A DNA stretch of 64,000 nucleotides from Botryllus schlosseri (Eukaryota), in the NCBI GenBank assembly GCA_051294905.1, contig CM119373.1, positions 5,146,001 through 5,210,000 of the forward strand, in the 5' to 3' direction. Shown here one piece after another: positions 1 to 27,171 of this stretch (the stretch's first letter is position 1; the number at the start of each line of letters is the position of its first letter). A program made the translations under genes and the position numbers. The notes beneath the pieces are model-generated. The model had not been told where the DNA came from. It saw only the letters and a program-made list of their open reading frames with translations, and searched no databases.

Positions 1-37
1 ACACCCTGATGTTGGCTAATGTAGCTAATGTGTGACC

Positions 38-967
38 CAGTGGCGTAGCAGCCACTTGGCGGTTCTGGCTCTGCGCCAGGGGCGGCAGGCTCTAGGGGGC
101 GACAAAATGAGGCTGCACAGTGTACTACTATAGAGGATGTAGGATGTCCTACATCCTCTATAGTACTACTGTACAGTGTACACAGCCGGCTAAAAGCAGC
201 GTAATTGGCAGTCCTATAGCTGGCGTCCCGTGAGCTAAAATGTAATCAAACTGCTCTCAATCGAAAGCTAGTGTCGCGCTGATTCCGAATATGTTAACAT
301 AGAGCAATGGAACCATTCCAGAGTAGCCGTCAATAAGGCGGATTGTTCCTAACAATCGGAGTGCCGCAACACGATGACCAATTGACCATGATAATGGAAA
401 TTATATCGGGCGATTATCCGGCCGATTTTCTGGCCAACCTTTAAATTGTATTTCCGGAATCAGGGCAACAATAGCTTTCTATTAAGATCAGTATTGTTAA
501 ATTTGAGCGTTCGGAGGGCCTGGCCAACTATAGGACGGCCACGGCCATATGAACAATGATGCAGCTCTTAGTTGTCTCAGCAGGAGGCTTGTCCGGGAAT
601 TCAAGTGTGACAACTAAGTTGCCCATCTATCCATAGGTTAGTGATTTATACTCTGGGTCACGATTTGTACAGAGCTCAGACCGAGATAGCTGTGAAGTAA
701 ACCGGTCCTAGGAACTGTTTAAGTTGGTAATAATTGTCCGATTGACAGATTGACAAAAACACATTCGTTCACTATTTCTTGTCTTTAATATTTTTGGCCT
801 TATTAACGTAGGGACGGTGAGACTGAGACGCGTTATATTAAATGTAATAATTTTCATTGAAAAGATTGCTTGAACATGAATCTATGTCGAAACTTGCTGC
901 GGTCTACGTAGGGGGGCGGCATTTCAAGCGAGAGCCAGGGGCGGCCGCACATGCTGCTACGCCAGTG
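38..967. mobile_element. Non-autonomous hAT-type MITE
   Basis: Termini CAGTGGCGTAGCAGC / GCTGCTACGCCAGTG (1 mismatch); 8-bp direct repeat GTGTGACC at 30-37 and 968-975; no ORF. Confidence 0.85.
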
Positions 968-1639
968 GTGTGACCCACTCATGGCGGAGATGATGGACTT
1001 TGATCCGCTGTCTCAAAAGGATTGGAGTGATGTCTCAAAAAGATTGGAATGATGAAAATTCCTATTTCAAGATATATTCTAATGCAGTGGTTTCTAACCG
1101 ACGGGGAACTTCAAGGTTTCTGGTTGGGAATAGACTCTTGTAAAAACATCGATATATTTATTAGCCTCGTTCATTAAGCGGCTGTATGTAATATCGAAAT
1201 ACCCTCTCTATTAGCTCATTTGCAATTTAGCAGCTCATTTGCAATTTAGCAATTCTTATTATCAGTGCCTCTAATTAGCGAGAATCGACTGGTAACCGAC
1301 AGCGGTCGCTGAGCTCCCACACATGTTTGTTATTCAGTCGTGCGCGAAATCGTGTGATTGAAACCACTTGATACGTAATAGGGGTTTTGTAGCGACACCA
1401 TGCGGCGCCACCACCGTGGTCATCGAACCGTAAGTAGCTTTGTCTCATTTTCATGTCGCTTTATATATAAAGCCGTTTGATTGTGCATTGCTCAGTTCGC
1501 TCAAGTGCTGCTAACGATAAACTTGTCGGTCATAGAACAGTGAATTTAGATATGAATTTAGATATAACATACAGTAAGCCAGTATTCAGGCAACAGAGCA
1601 GGAAATTGAGAATTGAAACAAAGATCTGTTGCTGGCGTA

Positions 1640-2248
1640 CGTGAAATGAAATTTAACCTCTGCAGCCTCCCATACGACGACTGTAGTAAGATTGCATACG
1701 AAGACTGCAGTAAGATTGAAATACAACTACACGCGGCCTGTACCGGCGCACGTAGTATACAAAACTTACTTCTGCAGCCTCGAAAAAGGAGACTGCCGTA
1801 AGATTGAACTACAACTACACGCGGCCTATACCGGCGCACGTAGTATTCATACCTTACCTTTGCAACTTCCCATACGGAGACTGCCGTAAGATTGAGCTAC
1901 AACTACACCCGGCCTCAACCGGCGCACGAAGTGAACAAAACTTCTGCAGCCTCCTATAAGATTGAACTACACGCGGCCTATACCGGCGCAAGTAGTATTC
2001 TAAACACTTCTGCAGCCTCCTGTAAAAGGACACTACCGTAAGATCAAATGAACTACAACTACACGCGGCCTATACCGGCGTACGTAGTATTCATAACTTA
2101 CCTTTGCAGCTTCCCATACGGAGACTGCCGTAAGATTGAGCTGCAACTACACGCGGCCTCAACCGGCGCACGAAGTGAACAAAACTTACTTCTGCAGCCT
2201 CCCTTAAGATTGAACTACACGCGTAAGATTGAACTATACCTACACGCG
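1640..2248 (+). repeat. Degenerate minisatellite, ~70-90-bp units (core AAGATTGAACTACAACTACACGCGGCCTATACCGGCGCAC) in a ~245-bp three-unit higher-order repeat
   Basis: AAGATT(G/C)A core recurs at ~1712, 1800, 1888, 1958, 2040, 2131, 2206, 2225; units pair 1712/1958, 1800/2040, 1888/2131. The last unit resumes at 14329 after the foldback insertion. Confidence 0.85.
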
Positions 2249-2520
2249 ACCAGAGTGAAGTTATCACACAAAATTCTATCACACAAATCGAAGGGTAACC
2301 ACTAAATCTGAAATGTGACAACATGAACGATGGTATCATCATCATGATGAAACAATGGCGTATCCGGATAGCTTATCCGGATTTGGACACTGACATATGA
2401 TAGAACGTAGATAGAACTCTGTCCATACCAAATTTTATGTAGATCCGTCGCCAAAAACGTGTCCAAAATAGATAACCATGAATTAGCACTTGCAATATTT
2501 CAACCAAATACGCGAGAAGC

Positions 2521-4706
2521 TCTCGTGTTTCGATGAGCGCAGTTCCGGAAAACAACATTTGCAGTAAATGTACACGATATCCCTAGACGAAGCTTGTATA
2601 GCACCTTAATCGTGCCAAATATTAAAGCTGTAGCAAATGTCTTAAGGGTCATAAACGCCGCCGACTTCTGGAAAAAATTACCACATTTTGGCGAATCGCG
2701 TCCATGAGAATTGCCACGAAATCGCAAAAACCTCTCGTGTTTCGATGAGTGCAGTTCCGGAAAACAACATTTGCAGTAAATGTTCACGATATCCCTAGAC
2801 GAAGCTTGTATAGCACCTTAATCGTGCCAAATATTAAAGCTGTAGCAAATGTCTTAAGGGTCATAAACGCCGCCGACTTCTGGAAAAAATTACCACATTT
2901 TGGCGAATCGCGTCCATGAGAATTGCCACGAAATCGCAAAAACCTCTCGTGTTTCGATGAGTGCAGTTCCGGAAAACAACATTTGCAGTAAATGTTCACG
3001 ATATCCCTAGACGAAGCTTGTATAGCACCTTAATCGTGCCAAATATTAAAGCTGTAGCAAATGTCTTAAGGGTCATAAACGCCGCCGACTTCTGGAAAAA
3101 ATTACCACATTTTGGCGAATCGCGTCTATGAGAATTGCCACGAAATCGCAAAAACCTCTCGTGTTTCGATGAGCGCAGTTCCGGAAAACAACATTTGCAG
3201 TAAATGTTCACGATATCCCTAGACGAAGCTTGTATAGCACCTTAATCGTGCCAAATATTAAAGCTGTAGCAAATGTCTTAAGGGTCAAAAACGCCGCCGA
3301 CTTCTGGAAAAAATTACCACATTTTGGCGAATCGCGTCTATGAGAATTGCCACGAAATCGCAAAAACCTCTCGTATTTCGATGAGCGCAGTTCCGGAAAA
3401 CAACATTTGCAGTAAATGTTCACGATATCCCTAGACGAAGCTTGTATAGCACCTTAATCGTGCCAAATATTAAAGCTGTAGCAAATGTCTTAAGGGTCAT
3501 AAACGCCGCCGACTTCTGGAAAAAATTACCACATTTTGGCGAATCGCGTCCATGAGAATTGCCACGAAATCGCAAAAACCTCTCGTGTTTCGATGAGTGC
3601 AGTTCCGGAAAACAACATTTGCAGTAAATGTTCACGATATCCCTAGACGAAGCTTGTATAGCACCTTAATCGTGCCAAATATTAAAGCTGTAGCAAATGT
3701 CTTAAGGGTCATAAATAGGGCTGGGCAAAATCGAGTACCTGAGTGATTCGATTCTGAATCACGTATTATGCTTCGAGTCGAGTCGAGTATGTCGAGTATC
3801 ACTCATTATGACGTCACAACAGAATGTACTGTGTTAAAGTTCAGATATGTACCTTTTATGACTCCGAAAAGAACGTAATGCCTGTTATCGTCACAGGTGA
3901 AAGATACTTCGGTATTTTTTCGACCATACCGATTTCATTGCACTTCTTGACAATGTTGTGAGATGATCATATGACTTCGGAAATGTGTTATCAGATCAGT
4001 CACCAGTAATTAACGTTCGTAGCTTTGTACTATGAGTCGTATGCTGCGACACGGCCAATCAAGGTTTGAAGGCTTCCCCAGGGGAAAATAGTATCAAAAC
4101 TATTATTCTCGTTAGTAAATTAACTTTCAGTTGCGAGGAACGTATAATTGCAGTACTCGAAAAAATCGTCTTTTACTACTCGACTCGAATCATTAAAATT
4201 AATACTCGATTCAGATTCGAGTACTCGAATCATTGTGCCCAGCCCTAGTCATAAACGCCGCCGACTTCTGGAAAAAATTACCACATTTTGGCGAATCGCG
4301 TCTATGAGAATTGCCACGAAATCGCAAAAACCTCTCGTGTTTCGATGAGTGCAGTTCCGGAAAACAACATTTGCAGTAAATGTTCACGATATCCCTAGAC
4401 GAAGCTTGTATAGCACCTTAATCGTGCCAAATATTAAAGCTGTAGCAAATGTCTTAAGGGTCATAAACGCCGCCGACTTCTGGAAAAAATTACCACATTT
4501 TGGCGAATCGCGTCCATGAGAATTGCCACGAAATCGCAAAAACCTCTCGTGTTTCGATGAGTGCAGTTCCGGAAAACAACATTTGCAGTAAATGTTCACG
4601 ATATCCCTAGACGAAGCTTGTATAGCACCTTAATCGTGCCAAATATTAAAGCTGTAGCAAATGTCTTAATGGTCATAAACGCCGCCGACTTCTAGAAAAA
4701 AATTAC
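2521..4706 (-). repeat. 212-bp tandem array in left arm (~7.7 units, interrupted by a MITE)
   Basis: Equivalent positions at 2575, 2787, 2999, 3211, 3423, 3635, 4387, 4599 (212-bp steps; the 3635-4387 step includes a 540-bp insertion). Confidence 0.97.
3716..4247. mobile_element. hAT (Ac-type) MITE inserted in the left 212-bp array
   Basis: TIRs TAGGGCTGGGCA / TGCCCAGCCCTA; 8-bp TSD GTCATAAA (3708-3715, 4248-4255); TCGAGT/ACTCGA subterminal repeats. Confidence 0.92.
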
Positions 4707-6349
4707 GACATATTGACGGATCGCCACCAAATCGCGAACTCTCACATCGCTATTTACCTTGCTGTTATGTTCAGGTTGACATTACTGCTGTAGGCCTACC
4801 GAAGAGCCGTTACCAGTGAAAGAAATGAAAGAGTTTTCGCACGAAGGAGTCAGACCACATGACAAAGAAATACTGATGTAGCCATCGCGTCAGGAATCCT
4901 ACTAGCTCTATACCCACCCGATGTAAACATGACCTTTCGCTATCCTCCATCCTGGATATGACATTGCAGTGCAATAATAAAATCTCTCAAGGCATTATAA
5001 GGGAGACACGGACGTTTATTGCTTTCTCAGACATGAAATGTTACAGTAATATAACCGTTAAGGTTTTGTTACTAATCATCTCCATTACTGCGAAGTAACA
5101 CAATGTATCATATCAGTGAATATAAACATATGGCAGTCTCCCTTTGCAGGAAAGCAGAAGCAAACATATGGATTACTGAAACACTTGTTAGTTATGGCAA
5201 CATGCTTGTAATAGCAGCATATGGATTCAATGAACACTAACAGTGGCATAATATATCAATGCACTATTCCAACTGTACACATACGTACTGTACGTGCAAG
5301 GCTGTGGCATCTGTATGTTTGTACCAAGCATCATAAACAGGGGCAGAGAGTGGTTGAAAGCCGCAATAGATTTTCAAAGAACAGAACATGTGAACTCCGC
5401 AATAGATTTTCAAAGAACAGAACATGTGAACTCAGCAACGATAACTGGAATTACCATAGGTCATGAAGTGGACACAGACTCTTTAACAGAAGAGAGCTAA
5501 CAAAGGACATATATTATCATGCAAAGTAATATACACATGATACCAGTTCAGCACAAAGTTTCAACAGGCTGTGAATACAGTGAATCGATACAACTTAAAC
5601 ATATGCTTCTGGGAGCTTCGGTGCAAATAGCTAGTCAACAAAACTGCAAAATATTATTCAAAGACATGGTGAGACTGGATGTTTGGAAACAATAACCAAC
5701 GCACAGGGTAATCAGAGATATAAACATGCCCACTGTATGTCGCGATAAATTTCACTAGCGCAGATAATTATCATGAAATTTTACAACCAAAACTGTCGAC
5801 GACTGGATGTTGGGTGAATAACATAGCACTACTAGGTGATTTGGTGCAAAGAGTCAACAAAACTGCAAAATATTACTCTGAGATGTCTGGCAATAGAGGG
5901 GAGGCAGAGTTGTCAAAGACATGGTGCGGGATTGGATGTCGCAATAAATTTCACTAGCGCAGATAATTATTATGAAATTTTACAACCAAAACTGTCAACG
6001 AGTCGAAAGGCTGTTGCTGTCTTGCAGCAGAACTACAAGAGCAAATTCTATACATAACAGCAGAATACATGACAAAAGACATACATTTAAAATTCTGCTT
6101 TTTGATGAAAGTATAAAACGACTAGCAGTGATTCTGTACAACGGAGCATCTACAAAGACATGGTGCGATTGGATGTTGGGTGAATAACACTACTAGGTGA
6201 CTCTGTGCAAAGGAGCATTTATAAAGACATGGTGCGATTGGATGTTGGGTGAATAACACTACTAGACGATTTGGTGCAAAGAGCCAACAAAACTGCAAAA
6301 TATTATTCAAAGATGTCTGGCATCGAGGGGAGGCAGAGTTGTCAAAGAC

Positions 6350-6820
6350 TGGCCCGCACGATCTCTACTATAATAGCCGCAAAGCGTCAGTCCATCTAAT
6401 ACTTGAGGAAATTGTGATTTCATCATCGACATAAAATGATCGATAGTGTCGCTATTTAGCCACACAGTGGAAGAAAGCAGCATGTTACGACTTTGATCAA
6501 TTTGGCCTTATCTAGGCACAGGGCTCTAGACCATTTCGAAAGGCCGAGCAAGGGGTTTAGAGGCTCGTCACCAATCACCTCAATTTCAGTCTTCTCGAAT
6601 CCGCGAAGTTTCTTTTGGGGCAACTGAAGTGTCTTTTATGTTATCAGTTTTTTCCTTTTTTACTTGAGCAATTAAGACCGAAACACCGGTCATAATTTCA
6701 AGTATCAATGCCCATATAACAATGTTTTGAACTTCCAGTTGCTTCAATTCTATACTTCAGTCCCTTTTCACATTCATTCTTTTAAATCAGTTCAACTGAC
6801 TTCTCCGAGACACCAGGAAC
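6350..6820 (-). pseudogene. Truncated, stop-containing paralogous fragment of the Ulp1-PHD exon
   Basis: 6350-6615 aligns with 10805-11070 (WLNSDTIDHFMSMMKSQFPQ retained) with stops/indels; polypyrimidine-CAG acceptor at 6821-6838 on minus. Confidence 0.85.
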
Positions 6821-6887
6821 CTGAAAGTAGAGAAACACAATCAAGAGTGATACGTTTCTACACGAAAGTAGACAGATTTAGTCTAAA

Positions 6888-7787
6888 GGTCAAGACTCGT
6901 AATTGACACCGATTCAGCTTTTTGAAGACCATGATGAGTTGTCACGGTATGATCTTAAAATAAGACTAATAACGTGGTGTATAGTAATACAGTTTTTTTA
7001 CATCAACATATTGACTTACAGATTTCGGTAGTCAGGAAACATCATGGTTGGAGTTGTGATGAGAGCACAATACACAACAACAAATATGGAATCAGCATCT
7101 GGTGCTAACCAAAGATTCTCTCGACTACAGACAGATGAGTGGGTGACGCTGACGCTTTGAATACATATCGCTGATATCTGTGGTGTTGGAACTATGTGAT
7201 AGTAAGCACTGTGAGTTACGGTTGCAGCATAAATGACGTCAAATTGACGTTATTCAATAATTATCACCATTCCATATTAATGGATTGGAATAATAGCACA
7301 ACCGACAAGTATAATAAATGTCATCAGTACAGACTCAAATTGGCAACAAGTTATATATACTGACCTACCTTACAATTCCGTTGCCAGGAAGGCAAGTAGC
7401 AACTTCAATTAGATTTCTTTAGTTCTTGATAGTTGACGAGAATGCTTCAGGAATTAAGAATACGGTGAGCTGCAACCAAAATGTAAGATAAATACACAGT
7501 CGAACCTTAACTAACAAATAAAACTCACCCGCTTTCCCCGGCACTACTCTCCACGACTAATTATAGGTAATTTGAATACGATCTCACATAACAGGTGAAT
7601 GTCTTCAACAGCAGCTCAAGCGCGTCGTAGAAACGTGGTCATCTCACTGCAAGGTTCAAAACAGGATATGACGTGGTGTCACGTGTCAACTCCATTGTCG
7701 TGATCAGTTCAGTTTATTGGGAATAATAAAAAGCTATTTTCTCCCTATTGCTGAAAATATAAATTGAAGTATGGTCCCATCACTGCA
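6888..7787 (-). pseudogene. Decayed multi-exon coding-like segment ('segment X'), product unknown
   Basis: Minus-strand GT..AG junctions (donor CGG|GTGAGT ~7527, acceptor TTGGTTGCAG ~7470, donor TCT|GTAAGT ~7019, acceptor TTTTAAG ~6956); all frames contain stops; inverted paralog at 27571-28480. Confidence 0.5.
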
Positions 7788-10213
7788 ATTACCCCAAAAT
7801 TGCTCTCAGAACTCGGTATTCTACATTGATCTGAAAAAAAACAGCCAGCCGGGTAGGTCGGAACAATAACGAATCTGCGAGTCATTCCAGCATGAGTGAC
7901 TCCTTTTTTCCTTTCTTGTTCAGTGATGTCGTAATTCCCCACGTGGCTTAGATGGTGTCGGTGATGTAAAGCAGGAAGCTGTGCTGTGGCCATTATTGAT
8001 GTGAGGCGTGCAAACTACTGCCCATAGCGCAGCAATGCAATGCAAGATTTGGAAAGGTTCATGAAGGTGCACAACCACAGTAACTAGTAGATGTTTGTAT
8101 TAACAGTTGAACAGTGTATGCATACCAACAATGTGCTCTTTTTAGGTGACACTGCGAAAGGAAGACCGGGCCTCAAAAATAATGAAAGGTGATTAGAGGG
8201 TGGTACTAGTACCGGGAAGGAGCAAGGTTGTAACCGAATCACAATTCGAGCCATGGTATTATGACCCTAGTCCGAGTCCAACTTATTGTGTTGACTGCTC
8301 AGTTTACAGTTATAGTGTTCTTGAACCCACTTTTGATAACCCTGTTTGGTGATACCGAATGGTTCTTATTTACAATATACTAATTATCCTCACTTTTAGC
8401 AGTTTCTGATCGCATTTTCAAGTTCCAGTGCCGATGGACGAAATCCCAATAGCGTGGTTACTTTACCATTTTTTGAAATTACAATGAATGTCGGTCTTGG
8501 CCGTGTGACTCTCTAGTCATTCAACCCTTGGAAGAAGACGCCTAAACTCATTGTGTTGTTTTTAGGGTACAGATCATGGGGACGCAGAGTTGTCAAAGAC
8601 ATGGTACGATGGATGTCAACGAAAAATTTTCTTGATATTCTCATTTCGAATTCTTTTTTTCAATAAAATATATTTATCAAAATGTATGAAGGAAGATGGT
8701 TAGAGCATTATTCAAGCATTGATGGATGTAGGCAGTAATGTCGGTCTTCTTAATGTTTAGGTAATACAGAGAGTATGAGATGCAACACAGATACCACAGA
8801 AAAGCGATCAACGGTCTGTAGTTGTTGAAAATAAGTCGAAAACAAGGACATTTCTTAGAAATAAGGACAGTTGAGTTTTTCAAGACCGTGCCCTTCAAAA
8901 TAATTTACATTGCAATTGAAATTATAATTTTATTGTATAACGACGCGTCGAATGAACAAATGGGATCATGTCATTTCATCACTCTGCGTCACTTCATCAC
9001 TCTCCCACGTTCATCGTCTGCCCAGGCACACCTGAAATGTAAGATAACATAAATTCAATATTTCCTATAACATAAATTCAATATTTCCTTTAGAAATAGG
9101 TTCTATTGGGAGATCTTGAATCTGATCGACTCTTTGAATGACACTTCCAAGAAACCCAAATTCAAGAACTGTAGTATAGAAAGTCTAGTGTAATGTTCAC
9201 CCCTACGGGAATCTCGGTACGTTTCGCCAAATAGAACACGTGCGCAGCTATGATTCTCCAAGTTAGAGTTAATTATATAAAAACAAAGATGTGCGAGCAC
9301 AGGACACAGATTCCACAACTCAATGATCACACAGATCAAATTGTGAGCTCCAGAGTACAGTCTTGGAAATGCAGCAATCTGATAAATGTAACGAAAGTGT
9401 ACCTTGGCGTCCTCTTGTATTGATCAGCCATCAGCTCATTTCACATCTTCTGCGCTGGTTCAAATTATTGCGACATGGCTTAGAATGGCATGGCCTCTTT
9501 TCATTGGCGAGGCTCGCGAGACCTAGTTAATCTTCAATCTTAAAACCTGTTTAACCCACGTTTGACGACTACGTGTAGGTGACATTGAATGCCTCGTATT
9601 CATAATACAGCAGTTTTCCTCACTTACAACTAGAATGGTCCTATTTTGCAAACAACAGCACTGATAGACCAACTATACCTTATGAATCTTAATGCCAAAC
9701 AAAGCTACCAAATGGAACTCGTAAATGCAATCTTGTTTTTATTAAATCGATTCACTAGATATTAAAGACCAGATATGCAGGCACGTCCGGGGCATAACTG
9801 GAAGTATCGGAAATCGGCGAGCGGGATGTAGGCTACCGTGGAGACCAAAGTTTAAACCCGGTTAAAATGAAAGATCTCCTGGGTCGCCATGACCCTTTCT
9901 TATCCAGTGAAATCGGTTGCCACAGGCAGTTCTTTTATTATCCAGCCCTTCATCCGTAATCGCGTCATCTCGTTCTTGCTTCTAATCGCCATGTTTCTCG
10001 TTAGCTTTCTTGCTTTTCCGTGTTTAGACCGCCTCGAAACTACGATCTGCAGTTGCTCTGCAAAATAAATTAAACGAGGCGGCAGAATTTGTATGCAAAA
10101 GGTTATTGATTATAAACAAACTTACATAGCAGTGAGATTGCGGTCTTCGCCGAAAAATGTTATTATATCGATTTATTAGCTATATTGACAAAGTTTTCAA
10201 GTGGATCAGCACA

Positions 10214-11029
10214 TCAAAGATTTTGACATTCAGAACAAAACCATAGAAAAGACGGTTCGCTCCAAACAGCGTCCGGAATTGGAAGAGGATAGCAGTTAGC
10301 ATGGTACCATTTGTCGCATTGGTCACATTTCACCATTTGAGGTTGAGAATCAGAATAAGGCAGCTTGCACACACAAAATAGTGGCAGGTTTAACATTGCG
10401 AATGGGGCTGGTATTGGATCCACGACAGAGAAATCAAGTAAATAGACATTTCCTACTTCAATCATGGTGAGGCACATTTGCCGAAGTTGTTGCGTATAAA
10501 CCACCGTTTCTGGATTCACCCCAAAACACAGGGTTATCGCATTAGCTATGGCGAAGACGCCGCAATCACTACCGTTACCTTGCTGTTGGACGCAGGGAAA
10601 AAGTACTTCAAGAGTGCTCGAACACGGCCTATTCAGCATTCCGATTGAACATAAGGTTTTGTCGTTATATGCCGAAGAATTATAGGCGGAATCATACACA
10701 CATATTTCGCCATCTGCACAGAACATGTTCGAAGCGGTGACCCAATGATTGTTATTTATATTAATTATTTGAATAAATTTTTTTTCTTGCGCTGGAGCGT
10801 AAACTGGACCCGCACGATCTCGACTATAATAGCCGCAGGACGTCAGTCCATCTACTTGAGGAAATTGTGATTTCATCATTGACATAAAATGATCTATAGT
10901 GTCGCTATTTAGCCACGCAGTGGAAGAAAGCAGAATGTTACGACATTGATCAATTTGGCCTAATCTAGGCGCAGGGGTCCGGACCATTTCGAAACGGCGA
11001 GCAAGGGGTTGAGGAGCCAAGTCAATCAC
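10214..11029 (-). CDS. Ulp1/SENP-family (peptidase C48) cysteine protease fused to a C-terminal PHD finger; probably a terminal exon
   Basis: WLNSDTI motif, catalytic His (NNHWV), Asp (VYDS), oxyanion Gln and Cys (QQQGNGSDCGVFAIA); PHD C4HC3: CVC..CDQC..WYHANC..WFCSEC. Listed start is GTG; frame stays open ~50 codons further upstream by manual reading; AATAAA ~35 nt after stop. Confidence 0.92.
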   Translation of the reverse strand: MIDLAPQPLARRFEMVRTPAPRLGQIDQCRNILLSSTAWLNSDTIDHFMSMMKSQFPQVDGLTSCGYYSRDRAGPVYAPAQEKKFIQIININNNHWVTASNMFCADGEICVYDSAYNSSAYNDKTLCSIGMLNRPCSSTLEVLFPCVQQQGNGSDCGVFAIANAITLCFGVNPETVVYTQQLRQMCLTMIEVGNVYLLDFSVVDPIPAPFAMLNLPLFCVCKLPYSDSQPQMVKCDQCDKWYHANCYPLPIPDAVWSEPSFLWFCSECQNL

Positions 11030-12834
11030 CTCAATTTCTGTCTTTTCAAATCCGCGAAGTTTATTTTTTGGCGACTGTAAGTATCTTCCGTATGTGTTAT
11101 TATTAGTTTTTTCCGCTCTACTTCTTTTTCTCCAAATTTCAATTTCGGGCTCGGCACAATTATCGGTAATCCGTTTTTGCGCTATGCGCTATGTGTGATA
11201 GTTTGCACGCATCATGTCCAATCGTCACATTTTCGTTAATTTGCACATAGACGTAGTAATTTGCCCTCATCACGTCTAATCGAGGCATATCCTTGACCAC
11301 TCTCCCTGTGACTATTTCCCAGGGTCCATATATATGCTGCAGCTATATGTAGTAGTTTGCACGCGTGACGTCTAATCGTTCCATGTCTTTGACACTTTGA
11401 CACCCTGGGAATACTGTGTTTTCTTAGGTATGCGTTCTTCGCGATAATGGATAGGTATGAGTACACTGTCTGTTAATTTTTGTTCACCCAATTGAAAATT
11501 AACAATGTCTTTGACAACTCTGCATCCCCTCGATGCCAAACATCTTGGAGTAATACTTCACGGTTTTGTTAACAAGTGATTTGCAACGAATCTTCCAGAA
11601 TCGTATATGTTGATGTTGCATCAATTCACTCTATTAATATTATCATTATGTTAACACCGCACCATGTCTTTGACAACTCTGCCTTGCTCAATGTTATGTT
11701 GGGCAGTAATTTGCACGCCTCACATCAATATCACCAACACACTAAGTGCTGGTACACTGTGCACTGTAATATGCACGCATTTATCGGTATGTATTCAGGA
11801 CGTGGTTTCGGTATGAATGCATCATGAAGGACTGTATGATGAGACACAACGCACCATGTCTTTGACAATTCTGCCTCCCCTCGATGCCAGACATCTTCGA
11901 GTAATATTTTGCAGTTTTGTTGACTCTTTGCACCAAATCGCCTAGTAGTGTTATTCACCCAACATCCAATCGCACCATGTCTTTGAATAATATTTTGCGG
12001 TTTTGTTGACTAGCTATTTGCACAGAAGCATATGTTTAAGTTGTATCGATTCACTGTATTCACAGCCTGTTGGGACTTTGTGCTGAACTGGAATCATGTG
12101 TATATTACTTTGCATGATAATATATGTCCTTTGTTAGCTCTCTTCTGTTGAAGAGTCTGTGTCCACTACATGACCTTTGGTAATTCCAGTTATTGTTGCT
12201 GAGTTCACATGTTCTGTTCTTTGAAAATCTATTGCAGCTTTCAACCACTCTCTGCCCCTGTTTATGATGCTTGGTACAAACGTACAGATGCCACAGCCTT
12301 GCACGTACAGTACGTATGTTGCCATAAATGCTGCTATTACAAGCATGTTGCCATAACTGACAAGTGTTTCAGTAATCTATATGTTTGCTTCTGCTTTCCT
12401 GCAAAGGGAGACTGCCATATGTTTATATTCACTGATATGATACATTGTGTTACTTCGCAGTAATGGAGATGATGAGTAACAAGACCCTTACGGGTTATAT
12501 CGCCAATTCCTGTAACATTTTATGTCTGAGAAAGCAATAAACGTCTGTGTCTTCCTTATAATGCCTTGTGAGATTTTATTATTGTCATATCCAGGATGGA
12601 GGATAGCGAAAGGTCATGTTTACATCGGGTGGGTCTGGAGATAGTAGGATTCCTGGCGCGATGGCTACATCAGTATTTCATTGTCATATAGTCTGACTCT
12701 TTCGTGCGAATACTCGTTCATTTCTTTCACTGGTAACGACTCTTCGGTAGGCCTACAGCAGTAGTGTCAACCTGAACAGCAAGGTAAATAGCGATGTGAG
12801 AGTTCGCGATTTGGTGGCGATCCGTCAATATGTC

Positions 12835-14056
12835 GTAATTTTTTTCTAGAAGTCGGCGGCGTTTATGACCCTTAAGACATTTGCTACAGCTTTAATATTT
12901 GGCACGATTAAGGTGCTATACAAGCTTCGTCTAGGGATATCGTGAACATTTACTGCAAATGTTGTTTTCCGGAACTGCACTCATCGAAACACGAGAGGTT
13001 TTTGCGATTTCGTGGCAATTCTCATAGACGCGATTCGCCAAAATGTGGTAATTTTTTCCAGAAGTCGGCGGCGTTTATGACCCTTAAGACATTTGCTACA
13101 GCTTTAATATTTGGCACGATTAAGGTGCTATACAAGCTTCGTCTAGGGATATCGTGAACATTTACTGCAAATGTTGTTTTCCGGAACTGCACTCATCGAA
13201 ACACGAGAGGTTTTTGCGATTTCGTGGCAATTCTCATGGACGCGATTCGCCAAAATGTGGTAATTTTTTCCAGAAGTCGGCGGCGTTTATGACCCTTAAG
13301 ACATTTGCTACAGCTTTAATATTTGGCACGATTAAGGTGCTATACAAGCTTCGTCTAGGGATATCGTGAACATTTACTGCAAATGTTGTTTTCCGGAACT
13401 GCACTCATCGAAACACGAGAGGTTTTTGCGATTTCGTGGCAATTCTCATGGACGCGATTCGCCAAAATGTGGTAATTTTTTCCAGAAGTCGGCGGCGTTT
13501 ATGACCCTTAAGACATTTGCTACAGCTTTAATATTTGGCACGATTAAGGTGCTATACAAGCTTCGTCTAGGGATATCGTGAACATTTACTGCAAATGTTG
13601 TTTTCCGGAACTGCACTCATCGAAACACGAGAGGTTTTTGCGATTTCGTGGCAATTCTCATAGACGCGATTCGCCAAAATGTGGTAATTTTTTCCAGAAG
13701 TCGGCGGCGTTTTTGACCCTTAAGACATTTGCTACAGCTTTAATATTTGGCACGATTAAGGTGCTATACAAGCTTCGTCTAGGGATATCGTGAACATTTA
13801 CTGCAAATGTTGTTTTCCGGAACTGCGCTCATCGAAACACGAGAGGTTTTTGCGATTTCGTGGCAATTCTCATAGACGCGATTCGCCAAAATGTGGTAAT
13901 TTTTTCCAGAAGTCGGCGGCGTTTATGACCCTTAAGACATTTGCTACAGCTTTAATATTTGGCACGATTAAGGTGCTATACAAGCTTCGTCTAGGGATAT
14001 CGTGTACATTTACTGCAAATGTTGTTTTCCGGAACTGCGCTCATCGAAACACGAGA
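12835..14056 (+). repeat. 212-bp tandem array in right arm (~5.7 units), reverse complement of left array
   Basis: Equivalent positions at 12942, 13154, 13366, 13578, 13790, 14002. Confidence 0.97.
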
Positions 14057-15458
14057 GCTTCTCGCGTATTTGGTTGAAATATTGCAAGTGCTAATTCATG
14101 GTTATCTATTTTGGACACGTTTTTGGCGACGGATCTACATAAAATTTGGTATGGACAGAGTTCTATCTACGTTCTATCATATGTCAGTGTCCAAATCCGG
14201 ATAAGCTATCCGGATACGCCATTGTTTCATCATGATGATGATACCATCGTTCATGTTGTCACATTTCAGATTTAGTGGTTACCCTTCGATTTGTGTGATA
14301 GAATTTTGTGTGATAACTTCACTCTGGTCTACACGCGGCCTATACCCGCGAAAGTTACTATACATAGTATACACATTACACAATTAGCAGTGACGTTGTC
14401 ACACAAAATTTTATTACACAAATCAAAGGGTACCTACTGAATCTAACATGCGACAACATGAACGGTGGTATCTTCAAAATAATGTAACAATGGCGTATCC
14501 GGATTTGGACACTGACATATGATAGAGCGTAGATATAACTCTGCCCAAATTTTACGTAGATCCGTCGCCAAAAACGTGTCCAAAATAGATAACTATGAAT
14601 TAGCGTTTGTAATAATTGATCCAAATACGCGAAAAGCTCTGGTGATTCGATGAGCGCAGTTCCGGAAAACAGCATTTGTAATGAATGTCCACGATATCCC
14701 TAGACGTAGCTTGTATAGCAACTTACATGTGTCATATATAAGAGCTATTTCTGGAAAAAATTGATACATTTTGGCGAATTGCGTCTGAGGATTGCAACGA
14801 AATCGCAAAAAACTCCCGTGTTTCGATGAGTTCAGGAAAAAAATATTTGCAGTAAATGTCCACGATATCTCTAGACGTAGCTTGTATAGCACCTTACATG
14901 TGCCAAATATTAAAGCTATCTAGCAAATGTCTTTCAGCTCCAAATCAACGATCACTTACAGAAAAAACATTACTACACATATTGACGGACCACTACCAAA
15001 TCGCGAACACTCACATCGATATTTAACCAGCTGTTCAGGTTGAAATTGCTGCAGTAGGCGTACCGCAGAGCCGTTACCAGTGAAAGAAATGAACAGGCGC
15101 CTACCGAAGAGCCGTTACCAGTGAAAGAAATGAACGAGTTTTCGCACGAAGGAGTCGGACTGCATGGCAAAGAAATACTGAGGATTCCTGGCGGGCGCGC
15201 CAGGAATCCTATCTCCAGACCCACCCGATGTAAAACATGACCCTTCGCTATCCTCCATCCTATCCTGGATATGACATTGCAGTGCAATAATAAAATCTCA
15301 CAAGACATAAGGAAGACACAGACGTTTATTGCTTTCTCAGACATAAAATAAATGTTGTTGTTCTCATCATCTCCATTTACTTTGAAGTAATACAATGTCA
15401 TCTCCATTTACTGTGAAGTAATACAATGTATCATATCAGTGAATGTGTACATATAGCA

Positions 15459-17112
15459 CAGGGTTGTCAGATTGGCCCTTTCGGGGCCAAATTAGTGAAA
15501 TTTGGCCCTTTTTAGAGGCAGTTGGCCCCAAAATAATAATTTGGCCCCTTGGCCCTTTAGTTTCAATTTTTGGCCCTTTTTGGAAGCAGTTGAGACATAC
15601 CGTCTAAGTATTCAAATACATCTATCTCGCAAATTGAGCTGACAGTGTTACTTAATGCCAATGTCAAAGATTCGAGTGGAAACACTGTAGAACAGGGGTG
15701 TCAAAGATCCGGCCCACCAAGCAATTCTGAGTAGATTGAACAAATCTTATATTTTTCAGCACATCATTTGCAGCAAATATTGAGATTTTTTGCAGGATAA
15801 ACGTCCTTGTTCACAGGGTCCATTATAACCACCCAACTACGGTGCCGTGGTTTCACTCTAGTTACCGCTATAGTGATATGTCGGTGAAATTGATATCCAA
15901 TTTCAAGAAGACAAAAAGTGAACACTAAATTCAAAGTTATTTACACAAGCTAAAACGCCAATGCGGAACCTTTATATGCAGTTTACGTGGAGAAAATATT
16001 AGTTGCACAAATGCATTATAAAAATATCTGCAGTCGCACTGCCGTGTCACTTTCGACTAGGGCTGGGCAAAATCGAGTACCTGAGTGATTCGATTCTGAA
16101 TCACGAAATATGCTTCGAGTCGAGTAATCGAGTATCACTCATTATGACGTCATAACAGAATGTAATACGCCAAATATCAAATATGTATCGTTTATACGTC
16201 ACCACAAAGAGTATAATGCCTGTTATCCATCTCATAATACACACTTGGCTATTTTTTCGACCATACCGATTTCATTCCTCTTGGTGATAATCTTGTGGGA
16301 CAATCATGACTTCGGAAATGTGTTACGTCCTGCAACCTTCGTATATAGATTCGTACCATATGTTTCGTATGCTACGATACCGCCAATCGAGGTTTCGATG
16401 CTTGACAGTGAAAATTAGTTCCGAAACTATATAACTGTCGTTAATAAATTACCTTTCAATGGGGAGAACCCTATAATTTCAGTACTCGAGAAAAATCGTA
16501 TTTTACTACTCGACTCGAATCATTAAAATTAATACTCGATTCAGATTCGAGTACTCGAGTCATTGTGCACAGCCCTACTTTGTTTTTGTAGAATGTAGAC
16601 TGTGTTGGAATTGTAAATACAGATTTGTGAACAGTGGACGAAAAAGCATCGAACATGGCTGGAAGCTATGTAGCCTTATATTGCTTATAGTACTTGATGA
16701 TTGATAGAAATTTCAGAGAAAAAAATTCAACATAACCGTAGAGTTTTTTGGTGAAAAACCTAAAAATTAGGGTTATAAGTTGGATAAGTTTCAAATGTAA
16801 AGAAACTATTCTCTCAATGTTTAATTAAAATTCATAAAATCTAATCGCTCTCATATTATAGCACAAAAAGTTTAATTTTACGATTTTATATTCAGTCGGA
16901 AGAGGCTTGAAATAATGAAGCAGTTATTGTAGTTGGATCCAGTGTAGTTGCAGGTAGTGGATTTGGTGTCCTACAACACTATCAACAATATAAAACTGGA
17001 TTTCCAGGTGTCTATGGGTAATGTTGCAACGTTATTGAACAATTTGGCCCTTTTTTGGCCCCTTTTCCGGCGCTGTTTGGCCCTTTTTCGCAAAAGATGT
17101 CTGGCAACCCTG
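15459..17112. mobile_element. Non-autonomous hAT element
   Basis: TIRs CAGGGTTGTCAG / CTGGCAACCCTG; TSD ATATAGCA at 15451-15458 and 17113-17120; GGCCC(C)TT subterminal repeats. Confidence 0.9.
16058..16577. mobile_element. Second, diverged copy of the 3716-4247 MITE nested in the 15459-17112 element
   Basis: Same TAGGGCTGGGCAAAATCGAGTACC start and ...CAGCCCTA end; TSD degenerate (CTTTCGAC / CTTTGTTT). Confidence 0.85.
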
Positions 17113-18929
17113 ATATAGCACAGTCTGCCTTCGCAGGAAAGCAGAAGCACACATATAAATTACTGAAACACCGGTCTCTGTTAAGGCAATATGCTCGTAA
17201 TAGGAGCATATGAAATCGCTAAGCAGTGGCATAATATAATATATCAATGCAGTATTCCAACTGTACATGTATGTACAAGGCTGTGACACCAAACATCATA
17301 AACAGGGGCATAGAATGGTTGAAAGCAAAGCCGCAATAGATTTTAAAGAGCAGAACATTTGAACTCAGCAACAATAACTTTCAGAGAGCTAACAAAAGAC
17401 ATATGTTATCATGCAACTCAATATACACACGATTCAAGTTCAGCACAAAAGTCTCAACACAGGTAGTGGATAAAGAATATAATAACAATATTAATGAGGG
17501 TGAATCGATACAACTTTGGTTATTTGCACCGAAGCATTGACTAAGTTGAGTTTATTAGCAATTTTCAATACTCCACAAAATTTGGGTTACAATGAAAAGA
17601 TAGGTAGGTATAGTAGTAAAGCAGCGGCTCCCAAATTTTTTGTACTCGCTCCCTTAGATGCTCGTGAAATTTTTCGTGCCCATTAGCCTACCGTTGTGTA
17701 GTCGAAATGACTAGAGTCAACATTTTCAGACAGTCGGTATTGACTATTATCCGCTACGGCCGGAATTCGAGCAAGTCTTCAACATAAATTGTGGTGACCC
17801 CCATCAAAAGTTGGATTGACTTGTCCCTCGGGTCTTGGTTACAACCTTGCGAATGCCAATCGGGAATCTACGAATATTTGTTGTTCTACTGGGTTCGGAC
17901 ATGTATTGGAAAAGTCGCATACAATCACGCAGCCCACCACTGAGGTATCTGGTCCGTTTCGATGCCGTAGCTACACTCTGCTAGTTATGGTCCTGATGAT
18001 ACTCTTAGACACTCTATTCCACCGGGATATTACGGAAAAGACGGACGTTGAGGCCAAATAAACACAGAAAAACCCATACCCTATATTTCACTCATATTGT
18101 GTTGGAGTGATATGCATCTTGGTCTAGCACTGTCTGCGTGCAGATTATAAGAGCATCATGACCGAGGTGATCGAAGTGAAAGTGCCGATTTCGAGAATGT
18201 TCCGATGTATTCGGTTAAAGCACCTTGAATTTCAACAATGCATACCAAACGTATTATTAGTCAGAAACATGGTTTATTTTGTTCAAGTGCATTTTCAACG
18301 TAGCCTAAATCTAAACACGTACTAGATGTCGACATTTGAATCTGGAGGCTAGCAGCGTCTATCACGTTCGGAAAGTGGAGCGGTGGGTAAGCCAGTCATT
18401 CAAGTCATAAATCCTTTTAATTGCAACACAACGTTTCCATTGACTTTCCCTAAAGTTTTGATAAAAACCCAGAGTTCCATGTATGTTCCGGACCACAATT
18501 GTGGAACAGCATCTCGACAGCTATCCGACAGTCGTCGAGCATGTCCGCATTCAAGTCGAATCACAAGCAATGTTCCTGTGAGCTGCGCACGTGCACGGTG
18601 CTGAGACGGTCTCTGCGCACTAAAAATCGAAACTGATGATGTGTTGTCCAAGGGTCTGTGCAGTAAGTTGGTGAGTGTGCGCAGGCTGATTACAATCAAT
18701 TTGGAGTTTTTGGGTTGCTAGTTTCTTTAACTTAAAATTATCTCAATACCGCACGCTGATGACATCACATACTCACAAACTTCCAATAAAAAAAAAGAAC
18801 CAATTTGCAGAATGAAGCAGTGGAACGAAATGTTATTAAAATCAAAACAATGATATTTTTAAAATTCAATGGCAGGTATATAACGTTCAGGTTGCGTACG
18901 ACGTCTCCCGCTGCGCCTTGGAGAATGCA

Positions 18930-19168
18930 GTGCCTGATTGGCCACAGGCCGTGTAGCTGATGCCTGACTGGCCAGAGGCCCTGCACTTGCCGCCTGATTG
19001 GCCACAGGCCCTGCAACTGTCGGTTGATTGGCCACAGGCCCTGCAACTGTCGGTTGATTGGTCACAGGCCCTGCAACTGTCGGTTGATTGGCCACAGGCC
19101 CTGCAACTGTCGGTTGATTGGCCACAGGCCCTGTAGTTGCCGCCTGATTCGCCACAGGCCCTGCAGAT
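18930..19168 (-). repeat. 30-bp minisatellite (GGCCACAGGCCCTGCAACTGTCGGTTGATT), ~8 units, in a coding-like segment
   Basis: Directly visible; minus frames read (AGPVANQPTV)n or (CRACGQSTDS)n. Confidence 0.9.
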
Positions 19169-19322
19169 GACAAAGCCATTGATGTAGGTGTCTGCACGCC
19201 AACACTTTGGGTTGATTGCAGAAATGCCATCCGCATTCATAATATAATCGTTTACAACCACAGAAGTCGCCGCCTCTCCTGGTACTATTTTTAAGACACC
19301 ATCTGTCACGCGGCGATCCAGC

Positions 19323-19537
19323 CGAACTTTGAACTTAAACTTGTTGTGTCCGTAATCCACTCCGATTGTAATCCACTCCGATTGTAATCCACTCCGATTC
19401 TTCCTTGAGGTCTGAACAGAAAATTGATATATGCATTCCGAACTTTGAACTTAAACTTGTTGTGTCCGTAATCCACTCCGATTGTAATCCACTCCGATTC
19501 TTCCTTGAGGTCTGAACAGAAAATTGATATATGCATT
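19323..19537. repeat. ~100-115-bp tandem duplication containing 16-bp GTAATCCACTCCGATT sub-repeats
   Basis: Two copies (19323-19437 with three 16-mers; 19439-19537 with two), each ending in a minus-strand acceptor-like TTTTCTGTTCAG. Confidence 0.85.
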
Positions 19538-19913
19538 AAGGCATAATCATTTCTGTTACAATTAACATTACTTGTACTATTACACAAGAAATTTTACATA
19601 TTTCAGCAACAAGAATTGACATTTTATATTGAGAAATACGATAGCAGCCAGTTTATTCAATATATCAATCAGATAGCACTGCCCCATCCCAATATCAGCG
19701 AGAAATATTTAGAATGCCAGATTTTGACACAGCCAGCCAATTTGAAATTATACCAGTGACGAATAGCCGGCTATTTCATTGCCAATTGCAGTAATAAAAA
19801 ATTCTATTATGAAACTGTTTGCAAGATAAAGAAATGATGAATATTATGTGCAAAACATATTGACTATGATGATCATAAATTACTTTTAACAATGTCAATA
19901 AAATTAACAATGT

Positions 19914-20307
19914 TGTCCCGTGGGACTGCGAAAGCAATTGTACACAGGATTGAAACGGCTCAGCTTTAGCCGGACTAGAGTACCGGTGCGAGTAATGACG
20001 GACTTCGAGTATCTTCAACTGACTGCTATAAGTCCAGACTACAGACACAATAATATCCCCGTCACGATGTATTGTAGAATCAAGGTCAATCAGTCTGGTC
20101 CAATAACACACCGTTAAAAAATACGCTGGCAATACTCTGAGAAATTACAATAATGTCAATTAGCATGCAAGATCAATAAGAACACCCTGTTAACTGTGCG
20201 ACGTTCTCAGACAAAAGAATGACCACGTGCGCTCAATGCCTGGCCTCGTTCTGTGAGGTAGCCATGTGTAACGAACCGTAGAATACGAGCCGAAAACCAC
20301 CTTGACA
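19914..20307 (-). repeat. 3' LTR (394 bp, TG...CA on minus)
   Basis: Minus strand begins TGTCAAGG (20307) and ends CCCACGGGACA (19914); matches 27172-27528. Confidence 0.93.
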
Positions 20308-20318
20308 TAGCCGCCCCT
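20308..20318 (-). promoter_or_regulatory. Polypurine tract (AGGGGCGGCTA) preceding the 3' LTR
   Basis: Purine-rich tract abutting the TGT start of the 3' LTR on minus. Confidence 0.75.
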
Positions 20319-20562
20319 GTGACGAAACGTAACTGCCAAAGGCGGTTATCGGTGAGCCACAAAAAAAATATATAAAGGAATGGTGGCTTTTGGGTTATGA
20401 CGACAATGAGGGAGTGAAAAAATATGCAAAACAAAAGCAATTGTACAGAACGCTGATACAGTGTCAGTAAGCGAAGTCAATGTAAAAAAAAAATGCACAA
20501 CATTGGCAACTGGGGTGCGAAATTGGCAAGATGCAAAGAGCATGCAATGAAGGGAGTCAAAA

Positions 20563-21669: not shown

Positions 21670-21887
21670 GGTGACTAGACGGTAAAATCATGGGATTTTT
21701 TGCGTCATCGGGTAGCTGTGAGCGGTTCAGACGACCCTCGACACGCATGACGCCATCAGATACATAAGGTAGCAACTTTGCCAATGAATTGGGAACATGC
21801 TCTTTGTTAACGAGAACATGGTCGGCGCGCGCGTTGTCACGAAGCGATTCGACAGCACCAGGAAACGACTCGGCTTGTACGAGTCTG

Positions 21888-21978
21888 ACAACTTCCCTCG
21901 TCGCTTCCTCAAGCTCCTCAACGGTGAGGAAGCGACAACTTCCCTCGTCGCTTCCTCAAGCTCCTCAACGGTGAGGAA
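21888..21978. repeat. 47-bp tandem duplication breaking the RNase H-integrase linker frame
   Basis: ACAACTTCCCTCGTCGCTTCCTCAAGCTCCTCAACGGTGAGGAA at 21888 and 21935; 47 is not a multiple of 3. Confidence 0.9.
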
Positions 21979-22026
21979 ACCAGAGCGTGGTTCGAGGAGC
22001 GGATCCGTTGGAGAGCCTTTTATCTT

Positions 22027-22668: not shown

Positions 22669-22844
22669 TGGCGAGAAACCAGGCGGCTTGTAGTATCTCG
22701 GAAATGATAGTTTTTCGAGTTCTGGGAGTGAGTCGACCCATTGTTTCCATTTTGCTTTGAAACTGTCGTCAATCGGTGTGTCCCAATCCAGGTCGTCACG
22801 AGATATTTCCTGCAGGAGCAGTCTTGCCGGTAACAGGAACGGGC

Positions 22845-23312: not shown

Positions 23313-23354
23313 CTGGTAATCGATCGCTTTTCCATCTAGTCTGCTGTCTTCAAA

Positions 23355-27134: not shown

Positions 27135-27153
27135 ATCGATGTCAGTCAGCTCT

Positions 27154-27166: not shown

Positions 27167-27171
27167 TTTTA

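What the first reader, a model, noticed from the sequence alone, without database searches (positions are those of the whole stretch)
2249..14328. 12-kb foldback (Mutator-like) element with satellite-filled arms and a protease/chromatin-reader cargo but no visible transposase
Seen: exact 9-bp TSD, ~2.5-4-kb inverted arms each with a 212-bp tandem array, and a ~5.5-kb loop holding an intact Ulp1-PHD ORF plus decayed exons. Established: 9-bp TSDs and long modular TIRs define Foldback/MULE elements, and some MULEs carry Ulp1 proteases. Inference: a recently mobile, non-autonomous cargo-carrying family, possibly undescribed in this lineage, whose retained gene could counter SUMO-dependent silencing.
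Basis: partly seen in the sequence, partly recalled or inferred. Interest (0 to 1): 0.75.

Follow-up and report, generated by a model that had tools for sequence, protein, structure and literature searches.

The report
Defective foldback Mutator-type transposon copy
This is a real 12-kb hairpin-shaped jumping gene in a sea-squirt genome that has lost its own cutting enzyme; the protease and chromatin-reader gene it still holds is the leftover tail of that enzyme's gene, not captured cargo, so it is a clear but fairly ordinary member of a known transposon type.

Summary
The element spans 2249-14328 and is flanked by an exact 9-bp target-site duplication (CTACACGCG), in phase with an 88-bp host satellite. 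The terminal 271 bp of the two arms are identical. Both arms carry inverted 212-bp arrays, and the loop holds an open Ulp1(C48)-PHD frame.

The "cargo" reading does not hold. The 324-codon frame aligns end to end with residues 689-1020 of a 1023-aa Styela clava protein (zinc finger, DDE core, Ulp1, PHD). That protein sits in a 14.4-kb foldback element with 185-bp satellite arms, a 9-bp duplication and a similar terminus (ACCAAAGT versus ACCAGAGT). The DDE core of that family gets no Pfam match, but a profile comparison links it to the MULE domain (89% probability).

Profile and tblastn searches find no transposase remnant anywhere in the 64-kb window. I read this copy as an internally deleted, rearranged, non-autonomous foldback element of the Mutator superfamily, Rehavkus-like, most likely moved in trans. 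Sequence membership in Rehavkus/NOF could not be tested. Copy number, an empty site and long-read structure also stayed untested.

Earlier notes of this scan describe the same kind of element on other pieces of this genome. Novelty: a new member of a known kind.

The parts
2240..2248 (.). left copy of the 9-bp target-site duplication, CTACACGCG
14329..14337 (.). right copy of the 9-bp target-site duplication, CTACACGCG
2249..14328 (.). whole foldback element, 12,080 bp
2249..2519 (+). left terminal unique region (271 bp), starts ACCAGAGTGAAG; 100% identical to the right terminus
2520..3715 (+). left 212-bp subterminal tandem array, first part (5.6 copies)
3716..4247 (+). nested 532-bp hAT-like MITE (TIR TAGGGCTGGGCA..., 8-bp TSD GTCATAAA at 3708-3715 and 4248-4255); absent from the right arm
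4248..4724 (+). left 212-bp array, second part (2.2 copies)
4725..6349 (+). left inner arm: 4725-5686 is 94-97% identical to 12816-11958; 5734-6349 is a degenerate ~70-bp repeat zone mirrored at 11502-12029
6348..6655 (-). decayed, frameshifted direct duplicate of the ORF's 5' part (85.5% to 10803-11114)
6886..7788 (.). unrelated repeat inside the loop, 85.6% to 28481-27570 (inverted)
10217..11188 (-). open frame of 324 codons (stop at 10214-10216): C-terminal third of a transposase-Ulp1-PHD fusion; first ATG at 10985-10987
10505..10768 (-). Ulp1/C48 protease core; His148 at 10745-10747, Asp166 at 10691-10693, Cys209 at 10562-10564
10226..10375 (-). PHD finger (C4HC3), closest to the PHF2/PHF8/BPTF type
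11502..12816 (-). right inner arm
12817..14057 (-). right 212-bp subterminal tandem array (5.8 copies)
14058..14328 (-). right terminal unique region (271 bp)
1702..2248 (.). 88-bp host satellite into which the element inserted; it continues at 14329-14385

Best explanation
The region is one copy of a cut-and-paste DNA transposon of the foldback type. It belongs to a Pfam-invisible branch of the Mutator (MULE) superfamily that looks like Rehavkus. Full-length relatives encode a single protein of about 1000 aa: an N-terminal zinc finger, a DDE core (DATG, CDGS, C-x2-H, T-x-G-x2-E), a Ulp1/C48 cysteine protease and a C-terminal PHD finger. In this copy everything upstream of the linker before the protease has been deleted, and the loop has been rearranged and padded with a partial duplicate, other repeats and about 3.6 kb of filler. 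Only the last third of the gene survives as an open frame. The copy therefore cannot move by itself. It inserted into an 88-bp host satellite and made a 9-bp duplication. The most likely source of the transposase is a full-length family member acting in trans, binding the identical 271-bp termini and probably the 212-bp subterminal repeats (inferred). The Ulp1-PHD frame is a young remnant, not a captured host gene. Shown: structure, TSD, homology of the ORF to the tail of transposase fusions, absence of a DDE core, and the same layout in a Styela clava element. Inferred: trans-mobilisation, repeat binding, and recency.
For: Structure and TSD. ORF domains and catalytic residues. The ORF aligns end to end with residues 689-1020 of P0152 (34% identity, E 2e-46) and with 410-640 of P0005 (42%, E 4e-38). 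The linker motif EIW.KR.R..G.Y.Q is invariant in the alignment. P0152 lies in L003, a Styela clava foldback element at 2331-16712 with inverted 185-bp arrays (17.5 and 16.5 copies), a 9-bp TSD ATATAGATA and the terminus ACCAAAGTTACC. A second S. clava copy, L005, has the same terminus and 186-bp arrays. The family core matches the canonical MULE domain: hhalign gives 54% probability (E 1.3e-4) against one sequence and 89% (E 2.3e-6, 186 columns) profile against profile, aligned on D1, D2 and C-x2-H. No transposase remnant was found: tblastn with 28 long relatives at E<=1e-3, with 12 family proteins at E<=5, and hmmsearch --max with three profiles on all six frames of the 64-kb window. L001, from another sample, has the ORF stop 77 bp from arm-like sequence, so the native gene end abuts the arm. 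dN/dS is about 0.37 between this ORF and L001. Sequence matching the element is present in three independent samples of the organism. Literature: Rehavkus has a 9-bp TSD, long TIRs, subterminal tandem repeats and a PHD finger (PMC6446971; 10.1101/2024.12.02.626372).
Against: No autonomous partner of this particular family was found. The best long relatives are only 34-45% identical in the protease region. The MULE link rests on an 89% profile match that does not reach the catalytic E, and Pfam's MULE model does not hit the family. The Rehavkus and NOF reference sequences could not be compared. Copy number and other copies' TSDs could not be measured, because the reads tool returned only ~150-nt unitigs. 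The frame is still open over 324 codons with all catalytic residues, which would also fit retention under selection. The second S. clava copy, L005, shows no TSD.
Confidence: 0.8

Rival explanations
1. The Ulp1-PHD frame is kept on purpose. The deletion derivative would express a stand-alone desumoylase and chromatin reader that helps the family, or the host, for example by countering SUMO-dependent silencing.
For: The frame is open for 324 codons in a loop where no other frame exceeds 106 codons. All catalytic and zinc-binding residues are intact. dN/dS is about 0.37 against a copy from another sample. Many database proteins consist of the Ulp1-PHD module alone. A possibly-RNA run holds a 152-nt contig over 11053-11197.
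Against: The native start and the upstream two thirds of the gene are missing, and the first ATG is codon 68. The constraint signal can come entirely from the time both copies spent inside working transposase genes. The short database proteins may be fragments of gene models. The nature of the 'RNA' run is a guess, and that run also holds arm sequence. No promoter or transcript evidence exists.
Confidence: 0.08
2. Pack-MULE-type capture: the element picked up a host SUMO-protease/PHD gene fragment as cargo.
For: MULEs capture host fragments in plants, and some animal examples have been reported (PMC8277862). The loop holds heterogeneous sequence, including an unrelated repeat and a 70-bp high-copy stretch.
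Against: The ORF, including the linker upstream of the protease, is collinear with the C-terminus of transposase fusion proteins in ascidian, metagenome and other relatives. In S. clava the same module is part of the single ORF of a foldback element.
Confidence: 0.03
3. Assembly artefact or simple inverted segmental duplication, not a transposon.
For: Kilobase-long, near-identical inverted repeats with satellites are hard to assemble. The available public runs gave only ~150-nt unitigs, so the long-range structure was not verified independently.
Against: There is an exact 9-bp TSD that restores the host satellite in phase. The arms are not mirror copies: a MITE with its own TSD sits in one arm only, the repeat counts differ, and the inner arms are 94-97% identical. 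Foldback elements in S. clava have the same architecture and a related terminus.
Confidence: 0.03
4. It is a foldback transposon, but of a superfamily other than Mutator/Rehavkus, and the 9-bp TSD is coincidental.
For: Pfam's MULE, Transposase_mut and SWIM models do not hit the family. The hhalign match is 89%, not over 95%, and stops before the catalytic E. Ulp1-PHD modules are attached to several unrelated N-termini.
Against: The profile match falls exactly on the MULE domain's D1, D2 and C-x2-H. The T-x-G-x2-E-x5-K motif resembles the MULE N-x-T-N-x2-E-x-N-x2-K motif (weak). The 9-bp TSD was seen in two species. Long TIRs with subterminal repeats and a C-terminal PHD match the published description of Rehavkus (PMC6446971).
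Confidence: 0.06

Closest known systems
Rehavkus (Repbase group, placed with the Mutator/MULE superfamily)
   Same: 9-bp TSD, long inverted termini with subterminal tandem repeats, a single transposase ORF with a PHD finger (PMC6446971 Table 1; 10.1101/2024.12.02.626372).
   Different: The literature I could read describes it only from arthropods and annelids and mentions no Ulp1 domain. Sequence relatedness to Rehavkus references was not tested. This copy lacks the transposase.
Drosophila Foldback (FB/NOF) and Tetris
   Same: Foldback architecture: arms built of tandem repeats around a loop. Most copies lack a coding region. FB-type elements are linked to Mutator in the literature (PMC4079207).
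   Different: Different repeat units and termini. From my own knowledge, NOF is not reported with Ulp1-PHD.
Styela clava element around LOC144431350 (L003 2331-16712; protein P0152)
   Same: Foldback layout with inverted 185-bp arrays, 9-bp TSD, terminus ACCA[A/G]AGT, and a protein tail collinear with this ORF over 324 residues.
   Different: Only 34% identity in the shared protein part and no nucleotide similarity. It has an intact 1023-aa ORF, whereas this copy keeps only the last third.
Plant KI-MULEs / Ulp1-carrying MULEs
   Same: Mutator-superfamily elements that carry a C48 (Ulp1-like) protease domain (named from my own knowledge; PMC12903978 links rice ULP expansion to MULEs).
   Different: In plants the ULP gene is a separate or captured gene. 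Here, in full-length relatives, it is fused in frame to the transposase and followed by a PHD finger.
Canonical animal MULE-SWIM-Ulp1-PHD fusions (P0128, P0162)
   Same: The same C-terminal Ulp1-PHD module (28-34% identity) behind a MULE DDE core.
   Different: Their N-terminal part is hit by Pfam MULE, ZSWIM1-3 and SWIM, whereas the family nearest to this ORF is not. The N-termini are unrelated at sequence-search level.

Membership tests
Mutator (MULE) superfamily | Target-site duplication of 8-11 bp, typically 9 | tested here: met
   Exact 9-bp CTACACGCG. The full-length S. clava relative has a 9-bp ATATAGATA.
Mutator (MULE) superfamily | Long terminal inverted repeats | tested here: met
   The terminal 271 bp are identical, and arms of 2.8 to 4.1 kb pair.
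Mutator (MULE) superfamily | DDE transposase homologous to the MULE domain (D, D, C-x2-H, E) | tested here: inconclusive
   This copy has none. The family of its nearest full-length relatives matches a MULE profile at 89% probability, E 2.3e-6, over D1, D2 and C-x2-H, but Pfam MULE does not hit it.
Rehavkus | PHD finger in the transposase | tested here: met
   PHD 35.3 bits at the C-terminus of the remnant ORF. P0152 and P0154 also end in a PHD.
Rehavkus | [quoted passage not shown] | tested here: met
   212-bp arrays in both arms; 185/186-bp arrays in the S. clava relatives.
Rehavkus | Transposase sequence clusters with Repbase Rehavkus references | not testable with these tools
Autonomous element | Encodes its own transposase | tested here: not met
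   No DDE core in the element or in the 64-kb window at E<=5-10.
Pack-MULE (cargo capture) | Internal sequence derived from a host gene unrelated to the transposase | tested here: not met
   The ORF is collinear with the tail of transposase fusion proteins.
Ulp1/SENP (peptidase C48) | His-Asp-Cys triad with the oxyanion Gln | tested here: met
   His148, Asp166, Gln201 and Cys209 are present. Pfam C48 gives 23.4 bits against a cut-off of 20.7. Enzyme activity was not tested.

The most novel reading that the evidence does not exclude
The deletion derivative is not mere debris. It would be a transposase-less satellite-armed vehicle kept in the family because it still expresses a stand-alone Ulp1-PHD protein. 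That protein would read H3K4-methylated chromatin and remove SUMO from silencing factors, acting as an anti-silencing helper for the autonomous elements (functionally like VANC in plant VANDAL elements).
Probability: 0.07. Interest if true: 0.75.

Novelty: new member of a known kind. Interest (0 to 1): 0.27.

Why it matters
On its own, this copy is an ordinary dead-end derivative. It is useful in three ways. First, it is a clean, dated example: exact TSD, identical termini and one nested MITE. Second, it shows how foldback Mutator-type elements shed their transposase yet keep satellite-filled arms, the structure thought to seed new satellite DNAs (PMC4079207; 10.1101/2024.12.02.626372). Third, it points to a transposase family found in ascidians, teleosts and rotifers that Pfam does not recognise. 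That family always ends in a SUMO-type protease plus a PHD finger of the type that reads H3K4me3, and the role of this fusion in transposition or anti-silencing has never been tested.

Tried and rejected
- **Hidden or spliced transposase:** rejected. I ran tblastn with 28 long Ulp1-PHD proteins and with 12 family proteins at E<=5. I also ran hmmsearch --max with the family profile and a canonical MULE profile on every stop-to-stop frame of the window. Nothing turned up.
- **Other domains in the loop:** Pfam on ten further loop frames found none.
- **tRNA or Rfam RNA in 1-20000:** none.
- **Autonomous partner of this exact family:** not found. The whole-library HMMER search gave one 93% fragment (P0001, a 1170-bp contig) and otherwise at most 45% identity. 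The clusters of P0001 and P0005 are singletons.
- **Other copies and their TSDs:** two exact-pattern scans of metagenome contigs found nothing. The scan's own index by sequence was blank.
- **Long-read or empty-site check:** Read laying returned only ~150-nt unitigs, and no junction or empty-site evidence was listed.
- **Right arm of the neighbouring older relative:** not found up to 64000.
- **Solved structures for the DDE family:** no hit.
- **Rotifer contig L004:** it starts inside its TIR, so no TSD can be read.
- **Fish protein P0154:** no contig on record.
Full report
**Observation**

The window holds a 12,080-bp element at 2249-14328. Its ends pair as inverted repeats: 2248-3715 against 12862-14329, 1468 nt at 99% (99.25% by BLAST). 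With the nested insertion removed, a gapped alignment of the two arms gives these identities:
- terminal 271 bp: 100%
- 212-bp arrays: 99-100%
- inner arms (4725-5686 vs 12816-11958): 94-97%, with many indels
- beyond about 5780 and 11970: pairing breaks down into a zone of degenerate ~70-bp repeats

Tandem Repeats Finder gives 212-bp arrays at 2520-3715 (5.6 copies) and 4248-4724 (2.2 copies) on the left, and 12817-14057 (5.8 copies) on the right. The terminal 21-mer ACCAGAGTGAAGTTATCACAC occurs only at the two ends; none is expected by chance.

**Target-site duplication**

CTACACGCG lies at 2240-2248 and again at 14329-14337. The host sequence is an 88-bp satellite (1702-2248) whose unit contains this 9-mer once. 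Removing the element and one copy of the 9-mer restores a unit in phase: GATTGAACTATAC-CTACACGCG-GCCTATACCCGCG, compared with the unit GATTGAACTACAA-CTACACGCG-GCCTATACCGGCG. The duplication is therefore a true TSD and not a by-product of the satellite.

**Why the arms differ in length**

A 532-bp block at 3716-4247 interrupts the left array only. It has the inverted ends TAGGGCTGGGCA... and ...TGCCCAGCCCTA, and it is flanked by an 8-bp duplication of array sequence, GTCATAAA (3708-3715 and 4248-4255). A 79% copy with the same ends lies at 16058-16577. It is a hAT-like MITE that landed in one arm. This nested insertion, the unequal repeat counts and the 94-97% inner arms together make an assembly artefact unlikely.

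**The ORF**

The only long frame is 10214-11029(-). It is 271 aa from a GTG and 324 codons stop-to-stop at 10217-11188. Pfam gives PHD 35.3 bits (cut-off 24) and Peptidase_C48 23.4 bits (cut-off 20.7). His148, Asp166, Gln201, Cys209 and a complete C4HC3 PHD are present, and the first ATG is codon 68. The PHD is most similar to the PHF2, PHF8 and BPTF fingers, a type known to read H3K4me3. That points to chromatin targeting but does not show it.

**What the ORF is**

A search of 1.84 billion representative proteins found 3858 relatives at E<=1e-3. In nearly all of them the module lies at the C-terminus, behind N-terminal parts of 0 to 870 residues. The closest long relative is P0005 (672 aa, metagenome), which matches at 42-45% with its residues 410-640.

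Searching with the N-terminus of P0005 found P0152, 'uncharacterized protein LOC144431350 [Styela clava]', 1023 aa. The 324-residue frame aligns end to end with P0152 residues 689-1020 (34% identity, E 2e-46). The alignment includes a linker upstream of the protease whose motif, EIW.KR.R..G.Y.Q...L, is invariant among the four sequences. The ORF is thus the last third of a longer protein.

**The full-length relative is a foldback transposon**

P0152 is a single uninterrupted ORF in L003 (S. clava chromosome OZ123524.1). It is flanked by inverted 185-bp arrays of 17.5 and 16.5 copies. The element ends at 2331 and 16712 with ACCAAAGTTACCCTAGCAGAC, and it is flanked by a 9-bp duplication, ATATAGATA.

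A second S. clava copy (L005, truncated protein P0153) has the same terminus and 186-bp arrays but no recognisable TSD. The terminus resembles that of the element studied here: ACCAAAGT against ACCAGAGT.

**Superfamily**

Pfam does not recognise the N-terminal two thirds of P0152, P0151 or P0005. A profile search found relatives in teleosts (Oryzias, Centropristis), a rotifer and metagenomes. Their alignment shows invariant DATG, D.S, C..H and T.G..E....K motifs.

Profile comparison with a canonical MULE protein (P0128: Pfam MULE, ZSWIM1-3 and SWIM, plus Ulp1 and PHD) gave 54% probability (E 1.3e-4), aligned exactly on D1, D2 and C-x2-H. Against a six-sequence MULE profile built from P0128 and the hits (checked), the match was 89% probability, E 2.3e-6, over 186 columns.

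Together with the 9-bp TSD in two species, long inverted termini with subterminal repeats and a C-terminal PHD, this fits the published description of Rehavkus, which is placed with MULE (PMC6446971, Table 1 and text; 10.1101/2024.12.02.626372). Babu et al. 2006 had already noted a C-terminal PHD finger on Ciona MULE-type transposases (PMC1702500). I could not compare the family with Rehavkus or NOF reference sequences, so sequence-level membership is untested.

**No transposase in this copy**

- tblastn with 28 long Ulp1-PHD proteins hit only the ORF and its partial duplicate.
- tblastn with 12 family proteins at E<=5 gave only noise outside 10226-11179.
- hmmsearch --max with the family profiles and the MULE profile, run on every stop-to-stop frame of the 64-kb window, gave nothing better than E 0.19.
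- Ten further loop frames have no Pfam domain.

The copy is non-autonomous.

**The loop is rearranged**

- 6348-6655 is a direct, frameshifted 85.5% duplicate of 10803-11114, and it abuts the inner end of the left arm.
- 6886-7788 is an unrelated repeat that also occurs, inverted, at 27570-28481.
- A contig from another sample (L001, 94% identical to 10220-10721) has arm-like sequence only 77 bp after the stop codon. In S. clava the gene end lies 300 bp from the array.

The native gene end therefore abuts the arm, and about 3.6 kb of this loop (6656-10213) is filler. dN/dS between the ORF and L001 is about 0.37. This estimate includes about 13 poorly aligned codons at the start. It fits descent from working transposase genes and does not prove present function.

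**Reads**

The terminal 272 bp are held by runs from 13 studies, mostly of one organism. Four runs were laid on 9800-15700. They returned only ~150-nt unitigs, so long-range structure, junctions and empty sites could not be judged.

Sequence matching the ORF, the arms and the terminus is present in three independent samples of that organism. Summed word depth over the arrays and terminus is roughly 10-30 times that over the flank and the ORF. This hints that the ends are multi-copy, but the tool warns that this figure is not a copy number.

**Mechanism**

Shown: a cut-and-paste type insertion with a 9-bp TSD, no transposase on board, and an ORF that is the tail of a transposase fusion.

Inferred: the copy was moved in trans by a full-length relative that recognises the 271-bp termini. 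The 212-bp repeats may add binding sites, as argued for foldback elements in 10.1101/2024.12.02.626372 citing Liu and Wessler 2017. In full-length elements the PHD may steer the enzyme to H3K4-methylated chromatin and the protease may act on SUMO conjugates. None of this has been tested.

**Earlier notes of this scan**

Notes on other pieces of this genome (s1-300845, s1-274164, s1-286523, s1-278711, s1-258694) report Rehavkus/NOF-type foldback elements, with and without a transposase-Ulp1-PHD gene. I used them as leads only. Using outside sequences, my own tests reached the same reading for this copy.

**Verdict**

It is a foldback, MULE-like, non-autonomous element, but the ORF is not cargo. 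I rate it a new member of a known kind, of modest interest.

Noticed in passing
window 3716-4247 and 16058-16577: Two copies (79% identical) of a 532-bp hAT-like MITE with ends TAGGGCTGGGCA... and ...TGCCCAGCCCTA. The first has an exact 8-bp TSD, GTCATAAA, inside the 212-bp array.
   Followed up: partly
window 14386-17460: Solo left arm of an older relative of the element (74-79% identical, same orientation). It starts only 57 bp to the right of the young element in the same 88-bp host satellite. No matching right arm was found up to 64000. Two related insertions this close may mean local hopping or a target preference.
   Followed up: partly
window 6886-7788 and 27570-28481: A ~900-bp repeat (85.6%, inverted) shared between the element's loop and the sequence just after the 3' LTR (ends 27528) of the Bel/Pao element at 19914-27528. 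Its identity is unknown.
   Followed up: no
window 9835-9904: A 70-bp stretch with very high word depth in all four runs laid. Contigs diverge on both sides, so it is a short high-copy repeat. It is neither a tRNA nor an Rfam family.
   Followed up: partly
proteins P0001-P0166: The Ulp1-PHD C-terminal module (3858 database proteins at E<=1e-3) is joined to at least two N-terminal transposase types that do not detect each other by sequence search: canonical MULE+SWIM, and the Pfam-blind family of P0152 and P0005. The module may have been exchanged between, or inherited across, deep MULE branches.
   Followed up: partly
window 37734-38024 and 61508-61648: Very weak tblastn matches (E 3.0 and 0.05) to the DDE region of P0152. 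They may be noise or badly decayed relatives. The profile search did not confirm them.
   Followed up: partly
window 2249-6349 vs 14328-11502: The outer arm parts are 99-100% identical while the inner parts are 94-97%. Either the outer parts are homogenised or the element descends from a recombinant of two family members.
   Followed up: no
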